NCBI GenBank assembly: GCA_965240325.2
Contig: OZ251232.1
Coordinates: forward strand, 1,364,001-1,428,000
Length of the DNA stretch: 64,000 nucleotides
Source of the DNA: Rebecca billardiae RCC1528
Taxonomy: Eukaryota > Protista > Haptophyta
Direction of reading: 5' to 3'
In this document: in pieces, positions 14,601-41,151 of the stretch
Layout of the letters: each line of letters starts with the position of its first letter
How positions within the stretch are numbered: the stretch's first letter is position 1
Notes under the pieces: model-generated
The model's database searches: none
Seen by the model: the letters and a program-made list of their open reading frames with translations, nothing else
Told to the model about the DNA's origin: nothing
Position numbers and translations under genes: made by a program

Positions 14601-16953
14601 TTCGGCGCGGTGATGGCCGAGTTCAAGGCGGACGCCGCCACGATCCGCGAGAACCTTCTCAGGGCGGTGCAGCACGAGAACGACCGCAGCTTCCAGGCAA
14701 AGCTGCAGGAGATGCAGAGGATGAAGCAGGAGACGACGGTGACGGAGATGTGCTACGCTGCGGGGCAGGGCGACGTGAAGCGGGTGCTCATCCTCGCGTC
14801 CGACATCGCGCCCGACATGGGTGCGGCGCCCTCGGCGCGCGCGCCCTCGGCCGCGGCGATGGCGCGCGCGCCCGCGCCCCACGCCAAGCTTGGGCCCACC
14901 CACCCACGCTCGGCCGCGCCCCCGCCCCGCCGCGCGCGCGCGCACGCGTGCGCTCAGGCGACTACGACGGCCGGACGGCGCTGCACGTGGGCGCGTCCGA
15001 GGGGCACCTGCACGTGTGCAAGGCGCTGCTCGAGCTCGGCGCGCGCGTCAACGTGAAGGACCGGTGGGGCGGCACGCCGCTGCGCGACGCGCTCGACAAG
15101 GGCCACATCGAGCTTGCGCGCTACCTGCACGCGCGACACGCCAAGCTGCTGATGAGCGAGACAGACATGGCGGGCAAGCTGTGCGAGGCGGCGAAGGCGG
15201 GCGAGCTCGAGCTGATCAGGATGTACCTCAGCTGCGGCGCCGAGCCCAACGCGGCAGACTACGTGCGCGCGCGCGCCGCCCCGAGCGCGCGCCTCGCGCC
15301 GCGGCGCGCCTGCGCGCGCACGCGCGCGCCGTGCGCGTGCGCGCATCAAGCTCGCAGCGCCCGACTCCTGCGTGCGTCACGCGTCACGCTCCTGCCGCCG
15401 CGCGGCCGCGTGCCCCGCGCTCCGTGCCTGCCGGCAGGACAAACGGACGCCGCTGCACGTGGCGTGCTCGGAGGGCAACAGCGCGATCATCCGCGTGCTC
15501 GTCGATTACGGCGCGGACAAGTCGCCGGTCGACCGCTTTGGCAACGTGCGCGCGCCTCCGCACCGCGCGCGCGCCCGCGCGCCGCGCGTGCGCACGCGGC
15601 ACGCGACGCCGTGTTGTCTCACGCGCCGCTGGCGGTCGCGCGCGCGCGGCACTTGGCTCGCAGACGCCGCTGCACGACACGCTGCGGCACGGCCACCGCG
15701 ATCTCGCCGCCGAGCTCGCGGACAGCGGCTTCGAGCTGCTGCTCGGCGAGGCGCAGCTCGCAGGAGAACTGTGCGAGGCGGCAAAGGCGGGCGAGCTCGA
15801 GCAGCTGCGCGTCTTTGAGCGGTGCGGCGCCACGCTCGACTCATCGGACTACGACCGGCGGACGTGCCTGCACGTGGCCGCGTCCGAGGGCAACACGGCC
15901 ATCGTCGCCTTCCTGATACAGCACAGAGCGAGGGTCAACCCCATCGACCGCTTCGGCAACGTGCGCGCAGCGCAGCGCAGCGCAGCGCAGCGCAGCGCAG
16001 CCTGCGCTGCGCTGCGCTGCGCTGCGCTGCGCTGCGCTGCGCTGCGCTGCGCTGCGCTGCGCTGCGCTGCGCTGCGCAGCGCAGCGCAGCGCAGCGCAGC
16101 GCAGCGCAGCGCAGCGCAGCGCAGCGCAGCGCAGCGCAGCGCAGCGCAGCGCAGCGCAGCGCAGCGCAGCGCAGCGCAGCGCAGCGCAGCGCAGCGCAGC
16201 GCAGCGCGCAGCGCAGCGCAGCGCAGCGCAGCGCAGCGCAGCGAGCGGCGTGCCGCGCCGTGTCGGCGCGCGCGCCTCGTGCCGCGCGCGGCCGCGCTCA
16301 CGCGCCTCGACCCCCGGCCCTGCCCCCGGCGCGCGCGGCGTGCGCAGACGCCCCTGCACGACTGCATCCGGCACGAGCACCACGCGACCGCCGCGCTGCT
16401 GCGACGGCACGGCGGGCTCATCGCCTTCACCGACCCGAGCATGGCGGCCACGGGCGATGGGCTTCTCTTCGACCAAGCCTACCTCTACCCTGGGGAGATG
16501 GGCCTAGGGCCGTTTGCGCGGGAGCTCACCTCGCTGTGCAAGTGGAGCGACGAGGACGCGGCGGTGGTGGTCGAGCGCATCGCCGCGTGGGACTCGATGA
16601 TGACGACCGTCGCCGACCTGCGCGGCATGTCCAAGCAGGCGTGGGCCGAGCTCTCGCGCTTCCTGCTCGCCGACTCGCAGGTGGGCACGGCGAGGTGGGG
16701 CCCGAGGCGCGAGGGCATCTGCCGCGAGCGCGCGTACGCGACGACGCACGTGGTGGACGAGGGGGTGACGCCCGACGCGCTGCGCGCCAATCGCGCGTCG
16801 GGCGACAGCCTCTCGGGCGCGGCGTTTGTGATGGGCTCGACGCTGACCGCCGAGGAGACGGGCCGTGCGGGCGCACCCGCCGCCACCGCCGCCGCCGGCG
16901 ACGCGGCGCGCGCGGCCTCGGGCGCGCGTGCCGAGCCTCTTGAGTCTGATTGA
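11699..16953 (+). CDS. Shaker/AKT-SKOR-like 6TM cation channel with cyclic-nucleotide-binding-like domain and ankyrin repeats
   Basis: S4 FVRLTRLLVALRL, pore YLRSLYWAFMTLTTVGHVD, C-linker, CNBD (FMADESIIEQG...GSTLCDAAFVFGVRNPYTAVA) and ankyrins (DYDGRTALH, DRWGGTPL, DYDKRTPLH, DRFGNTPLHD). Introns 12769-12885, 13221-13329, 14821-14957, 15263-15437, 15546-15663 and 15961-16347 all give an open reading frame on splicing. Confidence 0.9.
15967..16241. repeat. (GCAGC)n/(GCTGC)n pentamer microsatellite with orientation switches, inside intron 6 of the channel gene
   Basis: A GCAGC run, then a GCTGC run, then a long GCAGC run. Confidence 0.95.
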
Positions 16954-17150: not shown

Positions 17151-18877
17151 TGATGGCCCGCGGTGCAGGGCGGAGCGCGCAGCGTGGAGCCCGCACCAGC
17201 GGGCCCGAACAACGTTATTTCAAAAAGATCTTTGATCAAGAAAAAAGGGACGGGGGACGATTTTCATGGCTGGAGGAGACCGAGTTTCGAATTTTGAGAC
17301 CCTCTCTAACATGCATCACGGCCGAAAAAGGTCGCGCCCACGGCAAGTTCATAGTAAAGCGTGGAGTGACGCCCGTCCAAAAAACTTCACGCCCTTTAGG
17401 ATCCCTAACGTAACGAACCGTTACAAGCGATTTTTCCGGCCAATGAGATTGCAGCAAGGTCCAAGGAGCGATGACGTATCTAGATGGAGATTGCCGCGAA
17501 CCGATGTGACCATGTACGTCCCTTGAATCAGTTGAATCAACTATTCAATCGCGCCGTGTCTGTATCAGGAGCCGACGAGGCAAGGGTCAGTAGCCGATGG
17601 GCCAACCTCGGCGAATCTCAATACTATCTGACACGAGTGGAGCCGGCTGCCCCAGCAAAGCCAAATAACCTTGGTTGCCGCGGCTGCGGCGAGACTCACT
17701 GGCTCCGCGAGAGGGGGCGAGCTCGTGCGGCCGCTCCGAGCTCGTGCGGCTCGGAGCGACCGACGGGTGAGGACGGCGATGGGCACGTGCGCGCGGCGAG
17801 TTGCGCCTGGAGCGCGCGGCTGCGGCGGGTCCCGACTGCCGTCGACATCGCGTTCGTGCCCCCGCTCACTCCGCGCGCCCCCGCCGCCCCGTGTCGATGC
17901 CTGCGCGCGGCCGCGCGCCGGTCGGCGCCGGATGCCTGCGCGCGGCCGCGCGCCGGTCGGCGCCGGGGCGCCCCGGCCGCGCCGCGGCAGCCGCCCTGTA
18001 TTCGGGCTCTCGCAAGCTCGGGGGCAGCGGCGCCTGATGCCGGACTGATCGATCTCTGAGTCTTCGACTTCACCACGCGCCGCCCTTGCCATGCCTTTCC
18101 GGGGAGCGCCGACGATCCGAGTCCATCGTCGACGGTCGACTCTGAGCGAGGGCTACGCCTCGGAACTGAACGGTACTCTACGAGGAGGACGAGCTGCGCG
18201 GGCGACGGTGGTGCGTGACGTCCCCAGAGCTGGCTGTGCCTCTGCAACGCGTGCCGAGCCTGATCGAGGTGTGTCAGCCCGTGCACGCGCGGCGTGCGCG
18301 AACGATCCGTGACTGGTGCCCAGTCGCACCTCCGACCTCGGCACCGTGCTCCCTCGGGCTGTCAGCTCCGCGTGGCCTGGCGTGCACGTCGAGTTGCGCT
18401 CATGCGTCGATCACGCCTCGCGCCCGCCTGTCGGCCGTCGCGCAGGCGCTGGTCGAACCCTACTCGGACCAGTGCAAATCATCTAACTATCCTGGCGCTC
18501 GGCCGGTGCGCGGTGACCCGCGGCGGGACAGCGGTCAGTCAGCAGCAGGGGCCCGAACGAATCCGCGGCCCCGCACCGTGCTCCCTGGCTGTCGGCTTCG
18601 CGTGGCCTGGCGTGCACGTGGAGTCGCGCTCATGCGTCGATCACGCCTCGTCGCATCCGCCTGTACACAATCGGCGCCGCGCCGGCGGCTGCGAAGTGCG
18701 CCGATGGGCCCGCGCCCCGGGCGCGGCGGGCGGCGGCGCGCCGCTGGAGTCTAGTTGTACGGGCATGCAACTCCGGGTCTGTCAATAGACGACTGCGATG
18801 GAGGGTGCACCGCCACCGCGGGCCCTGAACTACGTTCGTTCTACGGAAAAGGACCGCGGAACGCGGTCATATTGATG
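17151..18877 (+). mobile_element. Helentron/HINE-like non-autonomous element, copy E1 (distinct cargo)
   Basis: 5' subTIR GGCCCGCGGTGCA at 17155-17167 and partial IR GCACCAGCGGGCC at ~17193-17205. The conserved 5' block (CAAAAAGATCTTTGATCAAGAAAAAAGGGACG) is present. 3' subTIR at ~18806-18824 (with a 6-bp duplication) and hairpin GACCGCG-GAA-CGCGGTC at 18852-18868. Confidence 0.75.
17700..18750 (+). pseudogene. Degenerate gene fragments with host-like introns carried inside E1
   Basis: Frameshifted coding-like segments (e.g. VPTAVDIAF|gtgccccc; LQRVPSLIE|gtgtgtc; gcgcag|ALVEPYSDQ). Internal duplications at ~17896-17965 and ~18341-18420/18573-18650. No product is recognisable. Confidence 0.4.
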
Positions 18878-19286
18878 CTCGGCCCCGGGCTGGCATCAGC
18901 AGGCTGCACGGCCCGTGACGGCTCGCGTGCGCGCGCGCATGATGCGCGTGCGCCACCTGGTTGGCCCAGACACGGGCCAAAATCATGCTCGTTGCCCTCG
19001 TCGGGGGCATTTATGAAGTCGATCATGGGTGCGCCAGTATTTATTCAGCGCCATATAGACTGACCTCACATACGACTGACCCTCACAGTGGCTGAGGGGC
19101 CCACGACTGTTCACCGTATTATAGGCGGTATTAGCTACTCCACCCGAATAATACTCGGTCTCAGGAGTACTTACTACTTAAGCTGAGTCGGACACTCGCA
19201 GACGGGACGGGCCGACGGGTAGCGCTATTTTGGGTTATAAGTCGTGACGACATCAAAGACGATGACGATGAATCACGACGACGATG

Positions 19287-19290
<4 letters not shown>

Positions 19291-19346
<56 letters not shown>
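19291..19346. repeat. (AT)n microsatellite
   Basis: Perfect AT run. Confidence 0.95.
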
Positions 19347-19350
<4 letters not shown>

Positions 19351-20015
19351 CGCCTACTGCTATATACTAGCTATAGTAGACCTATAGAGTCGTCGCGTAG
19401 TAGTGACGTCTGACGAATGTCGAATGACGACGACTGCAGACTATCCGTCATCATCGTCCCGCGATGATCATCGCGATCCAAACCGATCCATCCGACCATA
19501 TCGTCTGTGATCGGGCGGTCGTCGTACGTAAAGTAATACGACTACTTGTCGTCGTCGACAGACGACATCATCGTCTTATTATTGGATTATTTAGTGCTGA
19601 CGATGACATCTACTGTCGATCTTACGACTGCTCGTCTTGGTAGTAGTCATCGTCGTCATCAGCACATCTAGGGGCCTCACACGCTGCAATCAGACGCAGC
19701 TACTCGTCATTCTTGTAGTTGTGACCACTTGCGCGTATGCGCGCGGACGGTCCCACGTGAATCGCAGTGTCCGGTGCCCGGGTGCGGCGGCTGCTCTGGC
19801 CTCTGGGCGTCTGAAAAAATCAAAATGCGCGCTGGCGATAAATCCCGCCCAAGCCGTGGCGCCTTGACCCGGACCGGCACGGCCGGCTCCGCGGATTCGA
19901 AACGCATATCCGATCGTCGATCAGCACGCGCCGTCGGTACAGTATCGCGGACTACCGCCACATGCTACCGCTCCAGCACGATGCCAACGACCGAGACGAT
20001 CGCACGAGCTTGCGC

Positions 20016-20965
20016 ATGAGCATGCCATCGCCAGACAAGCCCATCCTGCTGCCACTTGTGGGCAGGGTCGCGGCGACGATGTTCGATGCGTCGGCGACAG
20101 CGCTGAAGCGCGCGACGCCCCTCGCAGAGCACCTCCTGCACTCCATCACGACTGGAGCCCCGCAAGAGGGGAGCCAGCGGCGCGACGTGGCGCCATGGAC
20201 GATCATTGATGAGCGCTTGTCCATCCTCGAGCCCGAGCTCCGCAAGCGCATCCTCGAGCTGTCGGCGGACGAGAATGTATTTGGGTGCAGTGAGCATGGG
20301 GCGCACGTGCTCACCAATGATGTGGAGGAGACGGTGCCCCTGGCAAGGGCCGCCCTCGACGCGGACCCTCGGCTGGTAGCGCTTAGGTACAAGCTGGTGC
20401 CGGCGGCATTGAGCGAGCAGGCCTTCTGGCGGTGCTACTTTTTGTGCGCGCACGGCGAGGCGAGGTCGGAGGATATGCGCCGCCGCGGCCGATGGTGCAA
20501 CAACGCGTGCGACCTGTGCCCGCGTCTGATGGGCGGCTCCGGCCTTCCCGCGCCGCCCTCGCGTGCTCCCTGCCTCGTGGTCGCAGGGCTGTCTTCCGTG
20601 AGCGTCACGCCCTGCTCGTCGACTACGCGGCGACGAACCACAACGAGGCGCGCGCCGACGCCAGCCCGGCTCCGTCCCGGCTTGACTCCGTGGTGGGCAC
20701 CCCGTCGACACGTGCGGTCCAACTGCTCGCGAGATGGGACGCGCAGCAGGCGGACGCCACGCCAGCGGCCCTCTCGCCCACAGCGCCTCCCGCGGCTGCC
20801 GCACCCGACGCCGCCGAGGAGGACTGGGAGGCGATGCTCCAGGCGGAGCTCGAGTGCCTGAGCCCGCACCTCCCGGCGTCCATGCTGCACGACATGGATG
20901 AGCGGCTCGCAGAGGTGCTCCGCTCGCCCATCTTCACCGCGCGCGCTCGGATGCACCTCGAGTAA
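20016..20965 (+). CDS. BSD-domain protein (SYAP1/Dos2-like)
   Basis: LRKRILELSADENVF...ALDADPRLVALRYKLVPAALSEQAFWRCYF is a typical BSD signature. Intron 20444-20586 joins in frame to AVFRERHALL. Confidence 0.85.
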
Positions 20966-21387
20966 TGGCACGATGCCGCACGATACCGTGAGGCACGTGC
21001 GCTGTTGTGCAGGCGTGATTCGCGAGTGCACTCTGGCTCCGGCTGAGTCTCGGAGGACACGTGCTTCAGCAGATATATTTATATTCATTTTCGCGCGCCG
21101 CCGCGGGCGCGACCGGCCGACCGCGTCGCGCGCGGCGCGCATGCCTCATGCGCGGCAAGCCGGCATACTACGGTTGCGGGTTGGCGTTGCCGCATACATC
21201 ATGTCAATCAATTATTAATCTGGCGGTCTGCTGAGTGCTGTGCCTGTGCCCGCTGTGGCGCTGAGTCGCCTGAGACTTGAGAGGCTCGGCGCCTCGGGCT
21301 GCTCGGTCCGAACTTCGTCGTATTCAGTTTACTAATAAGATCGATCAATAAGAGACGCAGCACACAGCTCAGGCAGGCGAGATTGTA

Positions 21388-21843
21388 GTGGGGTCAGAGC
21401 TCCGACCGTTACACTCTCGGGTGCCACCATCTCCCGAATAAATCTCTTGCTTATAGCATGAACTATCACACGGGTAACTAGTATTTACTTGGACGAACTA
21501 GTTAGTAGGCGTTAAGGCTTAATTCCAGGGTGTAGAATCCGCCTGTGCCAATTTCAGACTGCCAAAATGTGACGATCTAGACGGTGCGATTCTGGTGCAA
21601 ATAGCGAGGTCACCTTGGAGATCGGGTATCTCCCCTACTAATGTTGCCGAGGTCGCGTCGAGACTCGAGATTGAGGTCGTATATCTATCCAGTATGTGAA
21701 ATGTTTTCGCAAAACTTGTCAGCGTGACCCCAGCTCATTTCAGGCGAATATTGACATCCCGAAGTTTGATTGAGAGCCCCATCTCAAGACGACAGGAAGT
21801 TGGATTTTGGGCCACGCACCCCCCAGTGGGGCTCTGACCCCTC
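21388..21843. mobile_element. ~456-bp MITE with 13-bp TIRs and TA target duplication (Tc1/mariner-type)
   Basis: TA|GTGGGGTCAGAGC ... GCTCTGACCCCTC|TA, with 1 mismatch. A homologous inverted copy lies at 39466-39883. Confidence 0.75.
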
Positions 21844-22172
21844 TAGCGTCCGAACGATGTCGATTATGGCCCGCGGTGCAGGGCGGAGCGCGCAGCGTGG
21901 AGCCCGCACCAGCGGGCCCGAACCACGTTTCAAAAAGATCTTTGATCAAGAAAAAAGGGACGACGGGGGGCGATTTTTAGGGCTGGCGGAGACCGAGTTT
22001 CGAGTTTTTGAGATCGCATAGAGGTCTATTCGGCCGAAAAAAACCGCGTCCAGCTGATTCCGTAAGTAATCGATGGACGTGAGCGGCCGTGACTTTAACG
22101 TAACGGTTCGTTACGAGCGCGCTTTTAGGTATGAGATTGCCGCCAACCGCCAACCGATAAAAACGGACACCA

Positions 22173-22294
22173 CTCGCCTGAGCAATCATGAGCTGTGTGC
22201 GTCTCTTATTCTGAGTAAACTGTATAGTATGATCAATCAGTACTATACAGTTTACTAAGAATAAGCAGAGACGCACACAGCTCAGGCAGGCGAG
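22173..22294. repeat. ~120-bp foldback hairpin (mini-MITE-like)
   Basis: Arm TGAGCTGTGTGCGTCTC-TTATTCT-GAGTAAACTGTATAGTA pairs with TACTATACAGTTTACT-AAGAATAA-GAGACGCACACAGCTCA. Related partial copies at ~21325-21383 and ~40454-40480. Confidence 0.75.
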
Positions 22295-22879
22295 ATTAGT
22301 TTACTCATGAATATGAGACGTCGACGCCGCCTCTGATGAAGCGTACCCAACTCGCGAAAAATGAGACGTCGACGCCGCCCCTGACTATTTAAAGCGTCAC
22401 GAACTCGCGAAGCTCAAAACAGGGGGCTGCACCCACACAGGCGAGCCCTCCTCCTCGACCCGGCGACCATCGGTGTGGACGACCGCGCGGAGCGCGCGCC
22501 GCGCGCGCGGAGCGCGCGCGGCCGCGGGCGCCTCCCGCGCGGGCGGCGTACGCACGCACGCGCGCCCGCCCGCGCGCGCGTCCGCGTTTGCGGGCGCGCG
22601 CGGATCAGCCATCAGGCTTCCGTGTCGGGGCGTTGCGTTCGACATGCGCCATGTCGTGCCATGTCGTCACGGCGTGCGCATGTGCGTACTCTCGGTGGGG
22701 TGGTGCGCGGGCGGCGGCGCTCTCCTGATTTCTACCCCGCGCCCGTGTCGCTGTGCGTGCGCGCTGCGTCGCGCAGGCACGCAAGTGCGCGGGAGCCATC
22801 CGCGTGCTCGCGACCGGACGGCCGGCCGACGGCCGGCATCCGGCCGGATGGAGACAGAGCAGACAATTGACAGGCAGGT

Positions 22880-23540
22880 ACTCGCGTGGAGGCGCTGGGC
22901 GCCGAGCCGGCGAAGCGCGACGCCGAGCTCGACGCGTGCGCACAGAGGCGCTGGGCGCCGACCTGGCGAAGCGAGACGCCGAGCTCCACGCGCACGCGGA
23001 CGCGCTGGGCGGTCGCGCTGCCCTTGTCGACGCCCTGCAGCAGCTCGAGCAGGTGTGGACGGCCCTCGAAGCGACCGTGGGCGAGCGCGCGCCGCTCAGC
23101 CTGCCGCTGGCCGCCGCCATCCTCGAGGCCGACGCGGCGGAGCAGGCGGCGGGCGAGCACGGCGGCGCGGTGGAGCAGGGCACACGTGCGCCGGGCGGCG
23201 GGCGCGACATGCCACTCGCTTCGTTCCACCCCGAGCTCCGCTCGGTCTGCGCGTGGCTGCGCAGCGTGGGCGGGCAGCTAAGTGACGCGCGCTCTCGCCA
23301 TGCCGGCCCGAGGCGCGCCGGCTGAGCGACCAGCGGCCCTTCGTCGAGCGCATGGCGCAGCGCGAGCACCTCAAGCTGAAGCAGGTGCGCCCGCACGCGC
23401 GCACGCGCCGGCCCGGCGCCGCGCGGCGCCTCTCGCCCTCTCGCCCTGCGCGCGCCGCCGCCCCGCTTCCCCGCGCGGCCCGTCCGCGCCTCTCGCCCTG
23501 CGAGCGCGCCGCCCCGCTTCCCCGCGCGGCCCGTCCGCTG
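22880..23540 (+). pseudogene. Captured coiled-coil gene fragment in E2
   Basis: LSLPLAAAILEADAAEQAAGEHGGAVEQ...PLASFHPELRSV...LSDQRPFVERMAQREHLK..Q|GTGCGCCCG intron. It is frameshifted and homologous to the cargo in E3 and E4. Confidence 0.7.
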
Positions 23541-23785
23541 GTGTCCCATGCCACCCTTGGCCGTGCGCGCCCGCATACTCGCCCCGAGTCCGAGACTCGG
23601 TCTCGGGTCTGACTCTCCCTCTCAGAGTGGCTGAACTGTCTTTCTGACTCGGACTGACTGACTCGTCAGTCTCATTCTCAACCACTGCGCCGCGGGCCCC
23701 CAACTGCGTTGGTTCTACGGAAAAGGACCGCGGAACGCGGTCATATTGATGATGTAGATGATCGACTTATTATTTATTCGGATAT

Positions 23786-25588
23786 AAGACCGCGTTCCGC
23801 GGTCCTTCCGTAGAACCAACGTAGTTAGGGGCCCGCGGTGCAACCTCCGTCGGCTGCTGTCGATCAGTCTGACACTCTGACTGACATGGCGGGCCGAGGA
23901 CTGTCGCCAGCGGGCCGCGCGGCGGGAAGCGCGGCCGCCGGGGCGGCGCGCGCGCGCAGGGCGAGAGGCGCCGCGCGGCGCGGGCCGGCGCGGGCGGGCG
24001 TGCGGGCGCACCTGCTTGAGGTGCTCGCGCTGCGCCATGCGCTCGACGACGGGCCGCTGGTCGCTCAGCCGGCGCGCTTCGTGCCCGGGCAGAGCGAGAG
24101 CGCGCGCCACTCGGCCAGCGGGCACTGCTGGCCCCGCGGCCCCGGTGCGCTGCGCAGCCGCGCACCGATCGCCAGAGGCGAGACCGAGCGGAGCTCGGAG
24201 TGGAACGAGGCGAGCGGCGCGTCGCGCCTGCCGCCGCTCGTGCGCGCCTGCTCCACCGCGCCGCGCCGTGCTCGCCCGCCGCCTCCTCGTCCGCCGGCGT
24301 CGGCCTCGAAGCCACGCAGCGGCGGCGGCCAGCGCGGCAGGCCGTGACAATCGGCAGCCCGTGGCCGTGCGTGCTCGCCGAGTTGCTGCTGCTGCACCTC
24401 CGGCGCGGTCGACGACCGAGTTGAGGAGGAGCTCGCGCTCGGCGTCGAGGAGCGAGCTCGCGAGCTCGAGCTCGCCCTTCAGCCGCACTACTAGCTCCGG
24501 GCGGCATCCGGCTCATCTCCGCTGCGGCGTGCCGTCGCGGCACGCTCCCGTCCTCATTCCTCAAGCGACGAGCTCGCGTAGTGCTCCGGACTCGGCTCGC
24601 CCTTCGCTCCTCCTCGAGCGACGAACGCGCCTGCGGGTAGGTTGTTGGGCGCGCGCCGACTCGGCGTGACTCGGCCACGCGGCCCGGCGAGACGACACGG
24701 ACCGGTGGGCGCGCTCGGTGAGAGCGGAGTGCGAGGGCCGGGCGAGACGGAGTAGACGCGGGGCCTGCGAGGCGACAGGCGCGCTCGGGGAGAGCAGAGT
24801 GCGAGGGCGAGAGGCAGCGGCCGGCCGGCCCCCGCCACCACCTCGCGCACCGCGGCGTACTGCGGCGGCACGCGCACGCACGCGGTCCCGGCGGTCCGAG
24901 TCAAGGGCTCCGCAGTTCCACGCGTCGCGGTCGCGCCGGCGTCACCGGGCCCGGCGCGAGTCGTCAAGGGCCTTGCCCCAAGTGCAATTTCGTCTGCGTG
25001 CTGTATTCGTATCACGAATACCCTACTATGGGGGTACGGAGTGATCATCTTTTCATCTGCAGTGCGCCCTCTACTGTAGCTAGTGGCTTCCGCGGGAACC
25101 ATGTCCATTTACGACCATGCACGTTCAACCGTATCGTCGGAAGATTGAACGGGAACCCCCTTGGTAGAATACCCTGCTACTGTAGGACCCCCGTGCACAT
25201 GCACTTTTAAAAAACACGTCCGGCCCTGGGTCCGGTTGGTCCCGGGCTGGCGACCAAGTTTTGTTCCGTATGAATATTTACAACAAATCGCAGCTAGATA
25301 TTCGTTCACTACCCAGATATACTGACAAAGGCACGTCCAGCGGTTACGTATTACTCACGTCCGTCCGTAGATACGGAATTGGAGTGGGCGCGGCTATTTC
25401 GTCAATGCGTCTGGCTAATGCAGAGCAATGGGCCAAGGTACCCCTCAAAAAAGCGAAAACTCACCCTCCGACAGCCCTCAAAATCGTCCCCCGTCCCCTT
25501 TTCTTTGATCAAAAGATCTTTTTGACAACGTAGTGAGGGCCCCCGGCGGGGCTCCACGCTACGCGCTCCGCCCTACACCGCGGGCCAT
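23786..25588 (-). mobile_element. Helentron/HINE-like element, copy E3 (tail-to-tail with E2, head-to-tail with E4)
   Basis: Hairpin at 23788-23804 and subTIR at 23830-23842. Reverse 5' block at ~25480-25570 and subTIR TACACCGCGGGCC at 25574-25586. Confidence 0.8.
23890..24860 (-). pseudogene. Captured coiled-coil gene fragment in E3
   Basis: RLKGELELASSLLDAERELLLNSVV, EEAAGEHG, DAPLASFHSELRSV and LSDQRPVVERMAQREHLKQ|intron, with frameshifts. Confidence 0.7.
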
Positions 25589-25678
25589 GACCGCGTTCGT
25601 CCGCGGTCTTTTTCCGTAGAACGAACGTAGTTCGGGGCCCGCGGTGCACCCTCCGTCGGCTGCTGTCTCAGTCTGACA

Positions 25679-26533
25679 GACCCGTTGCACGGGTGAGTAA
25701 CCGTAGGCGTATGAAAAAACGACAAGCGTATGAAATCTCGCGGTTTTGTCGCTCGCGCTGCCGCATGGCTGACGTCCGCGCCGATCCGAGCGCAATGGTG
25801 CATTGCGAAGCCGATTCGCAATGCACCAATCCAATCCGCATGTCAATCGACCCAACCGTCGCTGAGAACGAACGACAAAACCCAGGGCAGGTGTCCACCA
25901 CGAAGCCACGCCGCGCGCGCGCTGGCAGCGTGAGCCGGCGCGGTTGCAAAGGGTTGCCCAAAGGCAGAGAGATCAGCCAATGCGGCTACCTTCGGCAAGC
26001 ACGCCACCTCAGCGTCAGCATCGGGTGGGGCCGTGACGATATATGCCCTTGGATGCGGCTCCAGCCAAACGGCTCTCGACGCGGGGAGCCGCCATCGGCC
26101 GCGAGCGCGTACACGGATACACGTGCTGTCCTCGTGAACGAGGATTCAGGAGACGAGGCGCGGCCCGCGATGCGCAGGCAAGACCTAGGGAGTGGCTCAC
26201 GCTTTGATCGCGTGTACGGGTACAGAAGGCGTGCGCACGCAACCGCACCGCCTTCGTGAAGCGCGTGGGCAAGCTGCTGAAGCTCTCACGATGCGCGCTT
26301 ACTTCTCACCTCCGTGCGCTCGCCGACCGCTCACGCTGCCTTCCGCGCGGCGGACCTGGGAAACCTGCCACCTGGCGCGCACGACGCAGCGCGTAACGCG
26401 GAAGGTGGTAGATCTGCTGCCACGCTCCCGCTGCCGCCGCCGGCGGCGGCAGCGGCATGCCCACGATGCGGCGACGGTGATGACTATCACTGCCAAAGTG
26501 TCGTTTTTTCGGCGCTCACGCGTGCAACGGGTC
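25679..26533 (+). mobile_element. 855-bp non-autonomous TIR element, 19-bp TIR, 4-bp TSD GACA
   Basis: GACA|GACCCGTTGCACGGGTGAG ... CTCACGCGTGCAACGGGTC|GACA. A second copy lies at 30074-30926. Confidence 0.9.
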
Positions 26534-26599
26534 GACATGTGTAACAGTTCGCCTGAGCTGCCATCACCGCCAACTCAGTCACTGCCGCCCACCGGGCCG

Positions 26600-27870
26600 G
26601 CGGGCCGAGGACTGTCGCTGCGGGCCGCCGCGGGCGGACTAGCGGCCGGCGCGCGCGCGCAGGCAGGGCGAGAGGCGCTGGCGCGGCGCGAGCCCGGGCG
26701 CGTGCGCGCGAGCGGGCGCACCTGCTTGAGGTACTCGCCCTGCGCCATGCGCTCGACGACGGGCCGCTGGTCGCTCAGCAGGCGCGCCTCGTGCCGGCAG
26801 AGCGAGAGCGCGCGCCACTGCGTCTGCTGCCTGCTGGCGGCCCGGCCTGCCGGCTGCGCAGCCGCGCACCGAGACCGACCGAGCGGAGCGCGGGGCGGTG
26901 GAACGAGGCGAGCGGCGCGTCGCGCCTGCCGCCGCGCGTGCGCGCCTGCCCCACCGCGCCGCCGTGCTCGCCCGCCGCCTCCTCCGCCGCGTCGGCCTCG
27001 AAGACGGCAGCTGCCAGCGGCAGGCTGAGCCGCGCGCGCTCACGGTGCACGTCAGCCTGCTGACTGATACGCCGCCGCCCATCGGCACTTCTGGCATCTG
27101 CGCGCGCAGCTGCTGCAGCTCGACGGCGGAGTCGTCGCGGCTGGCGGCGAGGGTGCGCACCGCGTCGATTGCCGAGGCCTGCAGCCCGGTGATCGCCGCG
27201 TCGACGCGCGCGGCGATTTCCCCACGCAGCTCCTCGCGCCACGTGGCCGCCGCTCGCGTGCAGGCAGCTGGGCGCCGCTGCGCGACCCGGAACCGGCGCG
27301 CGTTTCACTGATGGCGATGCTCCTGCTCGTCCTCACGCTGCTGCACCTCCGCGCCGCCGTCGACCGAGTTGAGGAGGAGCTCGCGCTCGGCGTCGAGGCG
27401 CGAGCTCGCGTGCTCGAGCTCGCCCTTCAGCCGCGCGAGCTCCGGGCGCATCCGGCTCATCAGCTCTGCCGCGCCGCTCGCTCGGCGGCGCGCTCTGCTC
27501 CGGTCGGCGAGCGGCGACGAGGCGGACGAGCTCGCGTGTCTCCGGACTCGGCTCGCCCTTGCGCGCTGCTCCTCGAGTGACGAACGCGCCCGCGGGCAGG
27601 TTGTTGCCCGTCGCCCCCGCCGCGATCTCGCCGCCCCGCCGCGATCTCGTCGCGCATGCTCCGTGCGCAGCGCGACGCAACTGGTGCGCGCGCTCCGTGT
27701 CTCAGTCTGGCGCGCGCCTGCGAGGTGACAGGCGGGCGAGCTCAGCCTCGGGGAGAGCGGAGCGAGAGGGCGAGACGCGCGGCCTGCGAGGCGACAGGCG
27801 CGCTCGGGGAGAGCAGAGCGCGAGGGCGAGACCAGCGGCCGGCCGGCCCCCGCCACCGCCACGCGCGTCA
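26600..27870 (-). pseudogene. Longest copy of the captured coiled-coil gene fragment (in E4)
   Basis: AELMSRMRPELARLKGELEHASSRLDAERELLLNSVD, WREELRGEIAARVDAAITGLQASAIDAVRTLAASRDDSAVELQQLRAQM, LSLPLAAAVFEADAAEEAAGEHG and LSDQRPVVERMAQGEYLKQ|GTGCGC intron, with stops and frameshifts. Confidence 0.7.
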
Positions 27871-28043
27871 CTGCGGCGACGTCACCCGGTCGGGGTGGGC
27901 GCTGCGGCTGCCAGCGAGCAAAGCTCGCTCAGAGCGAAATAAGCCGTGACCGCGGCTGATCAAGGGTCGGGCCGCGCCCGGGTCGCGACGCTGCTTCTTT
28001 TACTATTCACAGTTAGAGGTGATCATTTTTCCCGTGCCCATGT

Positions 28044-29428
28044 ACTACGGGGCGGCCCCACTGACGGACCGAGCAAACTTAGCTAAAACGCTGTAATCGC
28101 GCGTCAGGCGCAGCCTGACGCGTCGGACGTCACTGGCTACCTCGGGCGGGCTCGGACTCGTGGTCTGAGCCAGGTCCCTGCCCCCCAACCGTGCGTCGGA
28201 CCCTGATTTTGGGGCCCGCGGGCCTCCGTTCGGGGTCGGTGCGCAGCGCCGGGCACGACTGCCAAACCGGCCATCCGCAAATGGCTCCGTGACGCCGATC
28301 CAGGCGTGCTGCAGGCGCCGCGTTTGTTGGGTTCGTTCGGCAGCACGCGTGCCGACGACCAGGGCGGACAACGCCACCAGGGTCTGCGCGCCAGCCGCCG
28401 CTCTGCGGCAGCTCAGGCAGCCCTTTCGTGACAGCCGAAACAGTGCAGCGACGGCCCAAGCGCGCGCGCGCGTGCTGGTGTGAACAGGTTCGAGATGGTC
28501 GGTGTGCTGCTGCGCGCACTTGCCATGGCTGGGCGACATCGAGAAGGCAACAACGTGCGCGGCTGAGGGCCTTCTCGTCGCATGCGCGCAGAGAATGAGC
28601 TGACCCGCGCAGCTGGATGCGAGCCTGCGCACGCGACGCGTTGCCGAGCGGAGCGTGCGGGACGGTGAGGGTGATACGCGCGCGTGCGGAGGTGGCATAT
28701 GCGGTATTGAATCGCGTGGCGCGCGCGCGAGGATGCGCACCCTCGCGTTCGGCCAGAGCGCGTGCTCAAAGAGCAGCACGTAGCGGCGCCCAGAGACGAC
28801 GACGTGCTCAGCAAACGGCCCCCGTGTTGGGACTGAAGGAAGGCGTTGGAGACCGACGCGCGCGGTGGGTGCGAAGACCAGGTACTGGCCACTCACCGCG
28901 CACGCCGCGCGCGCCGCCAGACGGCTTCGACTGTCGCCGACCACGCCCGCGAGGCCCCCGGTTGCAGTCAGGCGGCTGCCCGAGAGCCTTGCCAACACAA
29001 TCCTGCTGCGCACGCGCGATCCGCGCGCGGGAAGAGGGAGCGGGCGGAGGAGCAGACAGAATGTGAGTCGTGGCGCAATCCCACCTGGCTGCTTTTCGCA
29101 AATCATCCCCGCACTCGGCGGTACGCGCGTGCGCATACCAGGCCCGTGCCGCCGACTCTGGATCAACGCCGGCGTCGGTCGGGTCGAGTGTGCAGGGTGG
29201 TGAGTCTCGATTGGAGAGCTCGACCGCGCTCAGGAGGCGAGCCAGTCCATGCCAGGGATGACGCGCCCCCACCTGGCGGCTCGCGCCGGCAGCATCGTGA
29301 CGCACGCGCTCGCGCGCGGCGAGTTCAGGCGGCGGACGGTGGGCAAAAGCGAAGTTCCACTTCGTTGGAAGTTCCGCGAAACTTGCGAACGATGTTTGCT
29401 CGTTGGACCACTCAGAGCGCCCCGTAGT
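28044..29428. mobile_element. 1385-bp TIR element nested in E4 (TIR ACTACGGGGCG; TSD ATGT, or TA if the TIR is read one base shorter)
   Basis: ATGT|ACTACGGGGCG ... CGCCCCGTAGT|ATGT. CGAGCAAAC and GTTTGCTCG sit at the same distance inside each end. The flanks are two units of a repeat containing GAGGTGATCATTTTTCCCGTGCCCATGT. Confidence 0.7.
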
Positions 29429-30073
29429 ATGTGTCAGATGTGTGCTGGTTAATCGCTCGAGTAATTGTACGTACTATTTCAGTATTTGCGATTGGAGGTG
29501 ATCATTTTTCCCGTGCCCATGTGTGCTTAATCGCTCGTAGGCGATAATACCCACAATCATCCAAAATGACGGTATGCCCCCAATAACGTTAGCGAGCCAA
29601 AAGACTACGCCGAATCTGCTGAAGACTACGCCGAATCTGCTCGGGGGTACGATAACGAGGCCTATTATATTAGTGGCGGCGAGGCCTAGTAGCGGCAGCG
29701 AGGCCTGTTAACTGACTATGCTTTTTGTACTATGGTCATGTGCTTATTTACTATGGTCAAAGTCTACCCACAATTACCCACCCTCGGACACTTGGACGTG
29801 GGTTTCGTTGATTCCTCTGAATACAAACAAGCTGGACGTGCCCATTTCTCGCTAATGGATGTCTCTTTGCGGTCTCAAAATTCGAAATTCGGTCTACTAC
29901 TCCAGCCCTGAAAACCGTCCCCCGTCCCTTTTTTCTTTGATCAAAGATCTTTTTGTCAAAACGTGGTTATGGTGGTTAGTGCCCGGCGTGGAGCGGGCTC
30001 CACGCTGCGCGCTCCGCCCTGCAGTGGCTGCACCGCGGGCCATCATCGTCTATATATATATAGTCCTATGACT

Positions 30074-30926
30074 GACCAGTTGCACGCGTGAGCGCCGAAA
30101 AAACGACACTGTGGCAGTGATAGTCACCGTCGCCGCCTCAGGCATACCGCTGCCGCCGGCAGCAGCGGCAGCGGGAGCGTGGCAGCGGATCCACCACCTT
30201 CTGCGTTACACGCTGCGTCGTGCGCGCCAGGTGGCAGGTGTCCCCTGTCTGCCGCGCGGAAGGCAGCGGTCGGCGAGCGCACGGAGGTAAGAAGGAAGGC
30301 GCGCTCGCATCGTGAGAGCTTCAGCAGCTTGCCCACGCGCTTCACGTAGGCGGTGTGGTTGCGTGCGCACGCCTTCTGTACCCGTACACGCGATCGCAGC
30401 GTGAGCCACTTCAGCCTGCCTGCGCATCGCGGGCCGAGCCGCCAGCGCCTCGTCTCCTGAATCCTCGTTCACGAGGACAGCACGTGTATGTATCCGTGGC
30501 GCGCTCGCTGCCGATGGCGGCTCCCCGTGTCGAGGGCGTTTGGCTGGAGCCGCATCCAGGGCATACATCGTCACGGTCCCACCCGATGCTGACGCTGAGG
30601 TGGCGCGCTTGCCGAAGGCAGGAGCATTGGCTGATGCCTTCTGCATTGGCCACCTCTGCGCGACCGCGCGTTCACGCTGCCGGCGCGCGGGCGGCGTCGC
30701 TTGGTGGGCACCTGCCTTGGGTTTTGTCGTTCGTTCTCAGCGACGGTTGGGTCGATTGACATGCCGATTGGATTGGGGCATTGCGAATCGGCTTCGCAAT
30801 GCCCCATTCCGCTCGGATCGGCGCGGGCGTCAGCCATGCGGCAGCGCGAGTGACAAAACCGACATTTCATACGCATGTCGTTTTTTCATACGCTCACGGT
30901 TATATTACTCACCCGTGCAACGGGTC
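30074..30926 (-). mobile_element. 853-bp TIR element, second copy of the 25679-26533 family, 4-bp TSD GACT
   Basis: GACT|GACCAGTTGCACGCGTGAG ... CTCACCCGTGCAACGGGTC|GACT. The interior is the reverse-complement homolog of 25679-26533. Confidence 0.9.
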
Positions 30927-32014: not shown

Positions 32015-33291
32015 CCCGCGCGCTCCCCCCCCAAGACGGGCCCGGCCCGTGATGTGCGCAGCGGAGGCGCGCGGTCGAAGTCATGCGCTTTCATCGCCGC
32101 GTCTGCAAGGGTGGTCAGGGTCGCCGACTCCAGCGGAGGCCGGCGCCGGAGCTTCGCTTCCGATTTTTTGCAGCGGCGCGGCGCGCTGGGCCGCCGCCGC
32201 TGTGGCGGGCCGCTCGGGGCGTGCACGGCGTGGGCTCGTGCGGCCGCTGCCGCGCACGCCGAGCGATCCGGCGCGGGCTCGCGGCTTGTCGATGGCCTCG
32301 CGCGCCGCAGCGCGACGCGCGCCTTGCCTAGCTTCGCCTGTCTCGCGCCTTGGCCGCCGTGCACGCGTGCGCCGCCAAACCGCAAGCTCGGCATACCTCT
32401 CAGCCGAGCGTGCACGTGCCTTGCGCGACGCGACGCGGGCATTGCCGCCAGGCGATGTAGCCGTAGTGCGAGCGCGCGCCGTGAAGCCTCGGCGCGGATC
32501 GAGAACAATGAAATGATGCCGCGTACGCGCGTGGACCGTCTGTTCGTTGAGCAGTGCTGAAAGCTGCACGACTGACTCTCTTGCCGGGGCGATCGTCACG
32601 TCGCATCGTCACGCAAGGCTCACACACACGTCATAGTGGCGTTCATCGTTTTGGCTACCACGCTCGACTAGTCTTCACGAGTCGCAGCGTCGCGATAGCC
32701 CATCGTTCAACGGAGGACCGTGATGTCCATTGGTGGTTGATGCGTCAGCAGTTGTCGACAGCTGACCGAGACGTTGAAGACACTCTCGATCCGCGCTGAG
32801 GCTTCACGGCGCGCGCTCGCACTACGGCTACATCGCCTGGCGGCAATGCCCGCGTCGCGTCGCGCAAGGCACGTGCACGCTCGGCTGAGAGGTATGCCGA
32901 GCTTGCGGTTTGGCGGCCCACGCGTGCACGGCGGCCAAGGCGCGAGACAGGCGAAGCTAGGCAAGGCGCGCGTCGCGCTGCGGCGCGCGAGGCCATCGAC
33001 AAGCCGCGAGCCCGCGCCGGATCGCTCGGCGTGCGCGGCAGCGGCCGCACGAGCCCACGCCGTGCACGCCCCGAGCGGCCCGCCACAGCGGCGAAGGCCC
33101 AGCGCGCCGCGCCGCTGCAAAAAATCGGAAGCGAAGCTCCGCGCCGGCCTCCGCTGGAGTCGGCGACCCTGACCACCCTTGGCGTCTGAAACTTTTCAGA
33201 CGCGGCGATGAAAGCGCATGACTTCGACCGCGCGCCTCCGCTGCGCACATCACGGGGGCCGCCGGGCCCGTCTTGGGGGGAGCGCTGCGGG
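32015..33291. repeat. Large inverted repeat/foldback: arms 32015-32504 and 32784-33291, ~280-bp spacer
   Basis: The arms are near-perfect reverse complements. The ORF track shows the same peptide on both strands (31006..32508- and 32774..33172+). Confidence 0.92.
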
Positions 33292-35330: not shown

Positions 35331-35493
35331 CACCGTGATCACGACTACTTTAAGTTTTTGCGAGTCGTGCTTTGAGTTGTGAGACGCTGACTCGGCTGAG
35401 CGCGACTACGATCACCGTGATCACGACTACTTTGTTTTTGCGAGTCGTACTTTGAGTTGTGAGACGCTGACTCGGCTGAGCGCGACTACGATC
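35331..35493 (+). repeat. ~82-bp tandem duplication downstream of the PP2C gene
   Basis: CACCGTGATCACGACTACTTT...CGCGACTACGATC occurs twice in tandem. Confidence 0.9.
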
Positions 35494-39271: not shown

Positions 39272-39465
39272 TCGAACATCAATCGCGCCTAATTTGCGCC
39301 GACGGGTCATCCATGTCACGCGCAGCTGCCGCTATGGGCGGCTATGGCCCTGCTGGGCCGTGGGCAGCAGGCGCAGCAGCGGAGCCGGTCACTACTCTAC
39401 CGCCTACTATAGAGTCGTGATGATGACGACATCTCTGTTCTCTTACATCCGGATCTATATATTTA

Positions 39466-39883
39466 GAGGGGTCAGAGCCCCACTGTTGGGGGTGTGTGGC
39501 CCAAATAAATCCATCATCGTCATCAGTAGCAACTTTCTGATGTGAATGTCGTCTTGAGATGAGGCGCTCTCAATTCTCATCGTCAGCAAACTCTGCTTCG
39601 GGATGTCAATATTATATTATATATATATATATATATTCATCGCCTGATCGAAATCAGACCTGGGGTCACGCTGACAAGTTTTGCAAAAAAATGTCAGGTA
39701 CTCCGGAGATATACGACCTCAATCTCGACGCGATCTCGGCAGCGTGGCATTAGTAGCTAGGCCCGACAGTCGTAGGGGAGATACACGATCTCCAAGGTGA
39801 TCTCGCTATTTGAACCAGAATCACACCGGCTAGATCACATTTATCATTTTGGCAGTCTGAAATTGGCACAGGCGGAAATCGAC
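39466..39883 (-). mobile_element. Truncated, insertion-riddled copy of the TA-MITE at 21388-21843
   Basis: Starts TA|GAGGGGTCAGAGCCCC and is colinear with the reverse complement of ~21535-21843. Confidence 0.8.
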
Positions 39884-40362: not shown

Positions 40363-41151
40363 TCCCCTTTATTACGGGCTCCGGCGGTGATCAGACTCAC
40401 AGACTGGCGGCCGAAGCCTCCAGCCCCGAGGCCGAGTACCCTGGCCAACCCCCGTGCGTCTCTTATTCTTACATAGTAAATCACGCGCCTTAATAATAAC
40501 CAATTGTGTGCAAGTTAAAACATGGCCGCGCAGGGCACACGGGGACGACTACATCACCGCCGGATCGCCCGCCAGGGCCCAGCGGCTGAGACTGCCGTCT
40601 GACATCCGGACTCCTGCACCCTCACCCTCGCCCTCGCTCGGGGCACAGCAGGTCCATGTCGGAGCCGCGCAGCGCAGGTCAGGATCGCGCTCAAGCAGCT
40701 CAAGGCAGCGCTCAAGCGCCATGATTCGATCGCGGTTCAGGCTATGCTCTGCCACCAGCGCCGACTTCGTCGACGATCGGGCACTGCCGACGGCGACGAC
40801 GAATCAAGAGCCACCTGCGCCGTCCTACCTGTGTCGTTAAATCGTAGAATGAGTAAACTGTAGCAGTAGTTTCTCGCGCGTTTCTACGGCCATGCATCTA
40901 CGCCATGAATGGCCGTACGTAGAAACGCGGCATGCAACACAAACAGGCGCAGCCCATGCATGCCGTAGATGTGTTGCATGCCGCACGACATTAAATATGC
41001 GTCTGCTGCGACACGGACATCGTGCCAAGTAGGACCCTTGATTGTGCGCCGGTGCGGCCCGGTCGATCCGCGGCCGGGCCAGTCGCCCCACGGCAGTGCC
41101 GGTGGGGCGCGACCAAGTTTGCGTAACAAGTAACAACCAGTGCGCCGTCGT

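What the first reader, a model, noticed from the sequence alone, without database searches (positions are those of the whole stretch)
17151..30045. Four-copy family of gene-capturing, Helentron/HINE-like rolling-circle elements
Seen: four segments (E1 17151-18877+, E2 21864-23751+, E3 23786-25588-, E4 25587-30045-) share the same ends around variable interiors. The 5' end is (TG)ATGGCCCGCGGTGCA with, in E1 and E2, a partial inverted copy ~40 nt inside, and a conserved 5' block. The 3' end is TGCACCGCGGGCC + AACTACGTTCGTTCTACGGAAAAG + a GACCGCG-loop-CGCGGTC hairpin at the terminus. The inverted repeat is asymmetric (terminal at 5', ~45 nt subterminal at 3'), and there is no conventional TSD. 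Established: asymmetric subTIRs plus a 5' IR and 3' stem-loop define Helentron/Helitron2 non-autonomous elements (HINE, DINE-1). Inference: this may be an undescribed HUH rolling-circle family in an alga that shuffles host gene pieces. No transposase is visible in the window.
Basis: partly seen in the sequence, partly recalled or inferred. Interest (0 to 1): 0.88.

Follow-up and report, generated by a model that had tools for sequence, protein, structure and literature searches.

The report
Non-autonomous Helitron2-type jumping elements in alga
Four decayed, non-coding copies of what looks like a known type of rolling-circle jumping DNA (Helitron2) sit side by side in the genome of an alga; three carry the same broken scrap of a gene, which is ordinary for such elements, though I found no report of them in this kind of alga.

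Summary
The 64-kb window has exactly four 5' blocks (~145 bp) and four 3' blocks (~60 bp), paired and in the stated orientations. The ends match the Helitron2 (HLE2) definition: an 11-13 bp asymmetric inverted repeat, a 5' hairpin containing it, and a 3' copy ~27 nt before a terminal GAA-loop hairpin. All four 5' ends follow TNAT, the target reported for Fusarium FoHeli1/2, not the TT of Helentrons/HINEs. E4 and E3 abut across one AT. The 'gene-shuffling' claim is overstated. E2, E3 and E4 share one neutrally decaying exon-like piece with no identifiable parent, and E1 has none. E4 is long partly because a separate TIR element with a 4-bp TSD is nested in it. No Rep/helicase is in the window and no relative was found in the collections I could search, so family membership rests on end structure alone. 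The host is a GC-rich alga with a complex red-type plastid (haptophyte-like; inferred). Verdict: probably old non-autonomous Helitron2 copies, a new member of a known kind. One oddity is a ~25-nt direct repeat shared by both ends.

The parts
17155..18870 (+). Element E1 (core limits; may run to 18877). No coding-like interior; carries a 92-bp internal duplication (18341-18431/18573-18664)
17155..17205 (+). E1 5' hairpin: terminal asymmetric inverted repeat (17155-17166) paired with the internal arm (17193-17205)
   Evidence: fold -23.5 kcal/mol, z -3.6, 0 of 200 shuffles as good
17193..17216 (+). ~25-nt direct-orientation copy of the 3' repeat plus the ~10 nt after it (also in E2 and E3)
17151..17299 (+). 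Conserved 5' block (~145 bp) preceded by TNAT; E1-E2 homology continues patchily to ~17465
18814..18870 (+). E1 3' block: subterminal repeat (18814-18824), small 5-bp hairpin with one compensatory pair (18826-18838), terminal 7-bp GAA-loop hairpin (18852-18868), AT
21868..23744 (+). Element E2 (may run to 23751); 5' block 96% identical to E1 over aligned columns
22870..23480 (+). Decayed exon-like cargo in E2: host-like codon bias at 22944-23244, a frameshift near 23280, and a GT donor-like site at 23385 followed by intron-like GC-rich DNA
23786..25586 (-). Element E3; tail-to-tail with E2 (about 40 bp apart); its 5' end abuts the 3' end of E4
23888..24857 (-). Same decayed cargo in E3 (more frameshifts)
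25587..25588 (-). Single AT shared by the E4 3' end and the E3 5' end (head-to-tail junction; TCAT is itself a TNAT site)
25587..30041 (-). Element E4; 5' hairpin disrupted by a 9-nt insertion; 3' hairpin loop has 3 extra nt
25679..26533 (.). Separate 855-bp TIR element nested in E4 (19-bp TIR with 1 mismatch, 4-bp TSD); not captured host gene
26599..27878 (-). Longest version of the shared cargo, in E4 (coiled-coil-like reading, stops and frameshifts)
28013..29522 (.). E4-specific ~1.45-kb insert between two 31-bp direct repeats; no codon signal, no Pfam hit
30074..30926 (.). Second copy of the nested TIR element, outside E4 (about 30 bp from its 5' end), 87% identical, with its own different 4-bp TSD

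Best explanation
E1-E4 are old, non-autonomous members of one Helitron2 (HLE2)-type rolling-circle transposon family, derived by deletion from a longer ancestor. SHOWN: shared ends with sharp homology limits and unrelated flanks; Helitron2 geometry; TNAT before every 5' end; one shared cargo decaying neutrally. INFERRED from known HLE biology: a Rep(HUH, Y2)-PIF1 helicase made by an autonomous copy elsewhere in the genome binds the repeated GC motif and nicks one strand at the TNAT/5'-hairpin end. It peels off the strand and stops at the 3' repeat-plus-hairpin (Bao and Jurka propose that 5'-3' repeat pairing marks the end point). The copy is then joined into a new TNAT^A site without a true duplication. 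Because the element's own 3' end reads TCAT, it is itself a target, which explains E3 sitting flush against E4 and may contribute to the clustering. One ancestral capture near the 3' end put a host exon plus intron start into the lineage of E2/E3/E4 (source gene unknown). Later a DDE-type TIR element inserted into the lineage seen in E4.
For: Four and only four paired ends, far above chance. 5' hairpin z -3.6 and -3.2 in E1/E2. 3' repeat 27 nt before an invariant 7-bp hairpin and 44-47 nt from the hairpin's end, within the 38-51 bp of FoHeli1/2 and 38-60 bp of mite HINEs. One compensatory pair in the small 3' hairpin. TNAT precedes 4/4 5' ends; the chance of the T alone is 0.21^4, about 0.002, in low-GC window DNA. 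E1/E2 continue ATATT after the hairpin, like the FoHeli ATATTTT end. Reconstructed empty sites read TNAT^AT (E3 needs one substitution). Cargo substitutions are even over codon positions (16/12/13 and 11/6/8), and many gaps are not multiples of three, as expected for copied, unselected DNA. A two-copy repeat with canonical Helitron1 ends lies about 20 nt from E2, suggesting rolling-circle elements have moved in this genome. Clustering and self-insertion are described for HINEs and FoHelis.
Against: No autonomous partner or Rep/helicase relic in the window: tblastn and an HMM of 73 RepHel proteins found nothing. These were mostly Helitron1-like proteins, so a distant HLE2 relic could be missed. 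No copy outside this window could be examined, so dispersal, copy number and true ends are unproven. No empty site. The first base in the simplest register is G, not the T that Helitron2 prefers (T if the boundary is shifted by one, which the data allow). Known Helitron2 targets are TTTT^ or TT except in FoHeli1/2. The cargo's parent gene was not found, so 'capture' is inferred from codon bias and a splice-donor-like site only.
Confidence: 0.74

Rival explanations
1. Non-autonomous elements of a different HUH transposase (Replitron-like, IS91/IS605-like or an unknown clade) that uses a direct repeat at both ends plus hairpins and a TNAT target.
For: The 3' arm of the 5' hairpin plus ~10 further nt is a direct copy of the 3' repeat region: 22 of ~27 columns match for E1 against its own 3' end, and an 8/9 match to the extension occurs at 8e-5 per site in background. 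Replitrons have short direct terminal repeats and a right-end hairpin and are tentatively reported in haptophytes (PMC10288648). A fixed tetranucleotide flank is typical of IS605/IS91 (own knowledge).
Against: The direct repeat is subterminal, ~25 nt long and half of it follows from the hairpin geometry. Replitron repeats are short (6 bp in Replitron-1) and at or near the termini, and no asymmetric inverted repeat is described for them. Every Helitron2 end criterion is met. No match in prokaryotic or viral collections beyond chance coding hits.
Confidence: 0.12
2. Cut-and-paste MITE/Pack-type elements of a DDE transposase with a 2-bp AT target duplication and weak true terminal repeats; the inner repeats are binding sites.
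For: Read on opposite strands the two extreme ends resemble each other at about 9 of 12 positions (seen). AT flanks both sides of E1, E2 and E4, and one AT between E4 and E3 is what insertion into a TSD would leave. DINE-1-like elements were long mistaken for MITEs, so the confusion runs both ways.
Against: The strong 11-13 bp repeat is 45 nt inside the 3' end. The terminal resemblance is explained by the 3' hairpin arm reusing the same core. E3 has TT, not AT, at its 3' side. An AT duplication is not typical of the known DDE superfamilies (own knowledge). Two hairpins at the 3' end are kept, one with a compensatory change, which points to single-stranded recognition.
Confidence: 0.08
3. Not a transposon family: local tandem and inverted duplications of one block, followed by decay.
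For: All four copies lie in 13 of 64 kb, three are adjacent and share their interior, and no copy elsewhere was available to me.
Against: Homology stops at the same bases at both ends in all four copies, with unrelated flanks. The ends are better conserved than the interiors (82-96% vs 73-82%). A host BSD-domain gene lies between E1 and E2 and is not duplicated.
Confidence: 0.05

Closest known systems
FoHeli1/FoHeli2 (Helitron2 of Fusarium oxysporum; PMC5148889)
   Same: Asymmetric inverted repeat of about 12 bp, hairpins at both ends, GAA loop, 3' repeat 38-51 bp from the end, TNAT^A target, ATATT-like 3' tail, self-insertion next to kin.
   Different: Those are 5-6 kb autonomous fungal elements starting TC; sequence unrelated. 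Here the copies are non-coding, GC-rich, have a long 50-nt 5' hairpin and start with G or T depending on register.
Helitron2 of Chlamydomonas reinhardtii (Helitron-1_CRe, -1N1, -1N2, CRe-1/2/3; PMC3627910)
   Same: 8-15 bp asymmetric repeat, 5' copy inside a 5' hairpin, 3' copy upstream of a terminal hairpin; ~200-bp conserved 5' block and ~50-bp conserved 3' block; algal host; non-autonomous derivatives.
   Different: Target TTTT^T/C; some carry Fanzor1 and variable TSDs. No Fanzor or other Pfam domain was found in the cargo here.
DINE-1 / HINE (non-autonomous Helentrons; PMC4067079)
   Same: 13-bp subterminal repeats, a short inverted copy near the 5' repeat, a 3' stem-loop, clustering, occasional gene fragments.
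   Different: Insert in TT with variable T runs; the partner encodes an AP endonuclease; DINE-1 has a core microsatellite. The TT target is not met here and the partner is unknown.
Replitrons (PMC10288648)
   Same: HUH elements of algae with direct repeats near both ends and a right-end hairpin; mostly no TSD.
   Different: Short terminal direct repeats (6 bp in Replitron-1), no asymmetric inverted repeat or 5' hairpin described.

Membership tests
Helitron2 / HLE2 | Short (8-17 bp) asymmetric terminal inverted repeat, 5' copy 0-2 bp from the end | tested here: met
   11-13 bp; 5' copy starts at the homology limit in all four
Helitron2 / HLE2 | 5' hairpin that includes the 5' repeat | tested here: met
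   E1 z -3.6, E2 z -3.2; degenerate in E3 (z -1.5), broken in E4
Helitron2 / HLE2 | 3' repeat subterminal, upstream of a 3' hairpin | tested here: met
   27 nt before an invariant 7-bp stem in E1; same layout in all four
Helitron2 / HLE2 | No target-site duplication; T-containing target (TT, TTTT^, or TNAT^A in FoHeli1/2) | tested here: inconclusive
   TNAT before 4/4 copies and no duplication longer than AT; no empty site available, so a 2-bp AT duplication is not excluded
Helitron2 / HLE2 | 5' terminal T | tested here: inconclusive
   Depends on register: the T before GGCC may belong to the element or to the target
Helitron2 / HLE2 | Autonomous partner with the same ends encoding Rep-PIF1 helicase of the HLE2 clade | not testable with these tools
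   None in the window; the rest of the genome cannot be searched by DNA; end motifs absent from the viral, metagenome and prokaryote collections
Helitron2 / HLE2 | Dispersed multi-copy family | not testable with these tools
   Only this 64-kb window is available; ORFs inside the elements were not in the protein collection
Helentron / HINE / DINE-1 (strict) | Insertion in TT with T runs on both sides | tested here: not met
   Flanks are TNAT and A(T); no T runs (vs PMC4067079)
Helentron / HINE / DINE-1 (strict) | subTIRs plus 5' inverted copy plus 3' stem-loop | tested here: met
Helentron / HINE / DINE-1 (strict) | Partner Rep-helicase fused to an AP endonuclease | not testable with these tools
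   No partner found
Canonical Helitron1 | 5' TC, 3' hairpin plus CTRR, no inverted repeat | tested here: not met
   Ends are GGCC/GGTC with an inverted repeat; the separate repeat at 21538-21845 does fit
Replitron | Short direct repeats at or near the termini, no asymmetric inverted repeat | tested here: inconclusive
   A ~25-nt subterminal direct repeat exists but together with an inverted repeat and a 5' hairpin
DDE MITE / Pack element | TIR at both extreme ends and a regular TSD | tested here: not met
   Strong repeat is 45 nt inside the 3' end; at most an AT on both sides, and not in E3
Gene-capturing element | Interior matches an identifiable host gene elsewhere | tested here: inconclusive
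   Codon bias and splice-donor-like site but no homologue in Pfam, 1.84e9 representatives or the 90% clusters

The most novel reading that the evidence does not exclude
The ends belong to an undescribed HUH transposon clade of red-plastid algae. It would combine Helitron2-like hairpins with a ~25-nt direct repeat at both ends, target TNAT sites including its own 3' end (building head-to-tail arrays), and be moved by a transposase outside the known HLE1/HLE2/Replitron groups.
Probability: 0.1. Interest if true: 0.68.

Novelty: new member of a known kind. Interest (0 to 1): 0.33.

Why it matters
If the Helitron2 reading is right, it extends the group to a GC-rich alga with a complex red plastid. 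The papers I could read report no Helitrons there: the Tisochrysis lutea TE table lists none, the HELIANO main text does not mention haptophytes, and the Diacronema lutheri genome paper names only LTR and LINE repeats. It would also suggest that the TNAT^A target, so far reported from fungi, is older or has recurred. That is useful for repeat annotation and for a view of HLE2 end recognition, but not a new mechanism. It would matter more if the partner enzyme proved to be a new HUH clade, or if many different host genes were found inside genome-wide copies.

Tried and rejected
End motifs in viral contigs and metagenomes: no hits. A relaxed 3' pattern gave 2 metagenome hits and 1 prokaryote hit; these match only the pattern's own bases, lack the terminal hairpin and the 5' block, and were rejected as chance. 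Rfam: only sub-threshold miRNA-like hits on palindromes and microsatellites, none on the ends. Cargo search: one phmmer hit, P0128, is a repetitive bacterial adhesin-like protein (25% identity summed over 8 stretches), rejected. Nothing in the 90% cluster search, Pfam or viral contigs. Only the E2 piece 22939-23280 was searched in the large databases, by reference; the E4 pieces went to Pfam only; broken or spliced pieces were not joined. Attempts to reach other genomic copies through ORFs inside the elements failed. Logan contigs of the same organism cover only gene regions. To look for a partner I pulled Helitron Rep-helicases from giant-virus bins and 73 relatives. They carry the Helitron1-type motif, none could be tied to this organism, and the two GC-richer loci fetched lack these ends. 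'Captured flank' for 25679-26533 was rejected: it has its own TIRs and a different 4-bp TSD at each copy. E1's interior shows no clear homology to the cargo or to the nested element (z at most 2.5). The run accessions are not in the paper library.
Full report
Host. The window is GC-rich (about 50-79% per kb) and intron-containing. Logan contigs from runs ERR14847148, ERR14847151 and ERR14847152 are 100% identical to it, and a JGI transcript (3300016936) is 89% identical. The S1-domain gene near 49 kb is closest to chloroplast ribosomal protein S1. Its N-terminus has a hydrophobic stretch followed by AAAF, which I read as the bipartite signal of algae with complex red plastids (own knowledge). 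With about 70% GC this suggests a haptophyte such as the Pavlovales (Diacronema lutheri is 73% GC, PMC8379373). A pelagophyte is not excluded, and the species was not identified.

Observation. Confirmed. The 5' motif and the 3' motif each occur four times, paired as stated, and the 3' motif is never expected in shuffles. Profiles of both ends find these four copies and nothing else of note. Homology shared by all four starts at GGCC (17155, 21868, 25586 minus, 30041 minus) and ends at GGTC (18868, 23742, 23788 minus, 25589 minus); flanks are unrelated. Aligned columns are 82-96% identical in the ~145-bp 5' block and 88-95% in the ~60-bp 3' block.

Anatomy of the ends. The first ~50 nt fold into a hairpin in which the terminal 12-13 nt pair with an inner arm (E1 z -3.6, E2 z -3.2). 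It is weaker in E3 and broken by a 9-nt insertion in E4. At the 3' end the inverted copy of the terminal repeat is followed by a 5-bp hairpin with one compensatory pair, a short A run, and an invariant 7-bp stem with a GAA loop (6-nt loop in E4). This is the Helitron2 definition of Bao and Jurka: an 8-15 bp asymmetric repeat, the 5' copy inside a 5' hairpin, the 3' copy upstream of a 3' hairpin (PMC3627910). One feature goes beyond it. The inner arm of the 5' hairpin and about 10 nt after it form a ~25-nt direct-orientation copy of the 3' repeat region in E1, E2 and E3; the extension has a background frequency of 8e-5 per site. I did not see this described in the passages I read, but I did not compare published end sequences.

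Insertion sites. All four 5' ends follow TNAT (TGAT, TTAT, TCAT, TGAT). TNAT has a frequency of about 0.02 in low-GC DNA of the window, and even the T alone has a chance near 0.002 for four copies. E4's 3' end and E3's 5' end share a single AT. The simplest reading is that E3 inserted at the TCAT formed by E4's own end; the two differ too much at their 5' ends to be a recent tandem copy. Removing the elements leaves TNAT^AT at each site (E3's last base then carries one substitution). Fusarium FoHeli1/2 insert between TNAT and A, end in ATATTTT, have GAA-loop hairpins and keep the 3' repeat 38-51 bp from the end (PMC5148889). Helentrons and HINEs instead insert in TT with T runs (PMC4067079). 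So the closest match is FoHeli-type Helitron2, not HINE. Two caveats remain. The register is ambiguous by one or two bases, so a 2-bp AT duplication is not formally excluded. And E1 and E2 share nine further bases after the hairpin, which may be the real end.

Interiors. E2, E3 and E4 share about 400 bp at 76-82%, and E3 and E4 a further 500 bp at 73%. This segment has host-like codon bias on the element's own strand, with scores up to 12 against 5-14 in a host control gene and below 6 throughout E1. It reads as a coiled-coil-like protein and stops at a splice-donor-like CAG/GT followed by intron-like DNA at the same place in all three. Substitutions between copies fall evenly on the three codon positions and many gaps break the frame, so the copies diverged without coding constraint. 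That fits one ancestral capture and later deletions. No parent was found, so it could also be a relic of an accessory gene of the autonomous element. E4's extra length comes from two inserts. One is an 855-bp element (25679-26533) with 19-bp TIRs and a 4-bp TSD, whose second copy (30074-30926, 87%) has a different 4-bp TSD and lies outside E4; this is a nested cut-and-paste element, not cargo. The other is a 1.45-kb unique insert between 31-bp direct repeats. E1 keeps what looks like a relic of the nested element's end at the same position (18766-18784), which suggests that E1 and E4 share an ancestor that already had it. A host BSD-domain gene lies between E1 and E2, outside the elements.

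Partner enzyme. None is in the window: 73 Rep-helicase proteins and their profile found nothing, though these were mainly Helitron1-like. The end motifs are absent from the viral, metagenome and prokaryote collections apart from chance hits. Indirect support for rolling-circle activity in this genome is a two-copy ~310-bp repeat with canonical Helitron1 ends (TC start, hairpin, 11 nt, CTAG/CTAA), one copy about 20 nt upstream of E2.

Mechanism. Most likely (0.74) these are non-autonomous HLE2 copies moved in trans by a Rep-PIF1 transposase. It would nick at the TNAT/5'-hairpin end, displace one strand, stop at the 3' repeat and hairpin, and join the copy into a new TNAT^A site. The ends, target bias and neutral decay are shown; the enzyme, the circular intermediate (reported for FoHeli1) and the capture step are inferred. 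With 4-18% divergence at the ends and about 20-25% in the interiors, these copies are old; nothing here shows current activity. Rivals are another HUH enzyme (0.12), a DDE MITE with an AT duplication (0.08) and local duplication (0.05).

Verdict. It meets every end-structure criterion of Helitron2 that can be tested, fails the TT criterion of Helentron/HINE, and cannot be confirmed as a member without the partner. The gene-shuffling claim shrinks to one probable capture. The remaining interest is the host lineage, the recurrence of the TNAT target and the direct repeat shared by both ends.

Noticed in passing
window 21538-21845 (+) and 39464-39876 (-): Two-copy ~310-bp repeat with canonical Helitron1 ends (TC start; hairpin, 11 nt, CTAG or CTAA); the second copy has many small insertions and a (TA)n.
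   Followed up: partly
window 25679-26533 and 30074-30926: Non-autonomous TIR element, ~855 bp, 19-bp TIR starting GACCC, 4-bp TSDs that differ between copies; superfamily not assigned (Sola-like TSD length is only a guess).
   Followed up: partly
window 22189-22284, 21321-21384, 40454-40469: 96-bp near-perfect palindrome inside E2, with partial copies outside it; probably another small mobile element.
   Followed up: partly
window 28013-28043 and 29492-29522: 31-bp direct repeat flanking a 1.45-kb E4-specific insert; a weakly similar motif occurs once in E3 near 25041. Unexplained.
   Followed up: partly
window 32015-32504 and 32784-33291: ~500-bp inverted repeat, 94.5% identical, 279-nt spacer, between a sulfotransferase-like gene and a LisH/PP2C gene that are divergently oriented.
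   Followed up: no
window 15974-16243: (GCGCA)n array that switches strand, forming a large imperfect palindrome within the ankyrin-gene region.
   Followed up: no
window 35331-35493 and 58959-59241: Two-unit tandem repeats of 80 bp and 135 bp.
   Followed up: no
window 1786-5070: Large protein with ~1.29-kb internal repeats separated by proline-serine-rich linkers; no Pfam hit.
   Followed up: no
L030:3859-8862 (+) and L040:2264-3919 (-): Giant-virus metagenome bins carry Helitron Rep-helicase ORFs (PF14214, PF05970) whose relatives are almost all unnamed environmental sequences with a distinct motif-2 variant; could be real viral passengers or binning contamination.
   Followed up: partly
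window 48986-50306: Nuclear-encoded plastid ribosomal protein S1 with a bipartite-looking presequence; its intron starts with GC after AAG rather than GT.
   Followed up: partly
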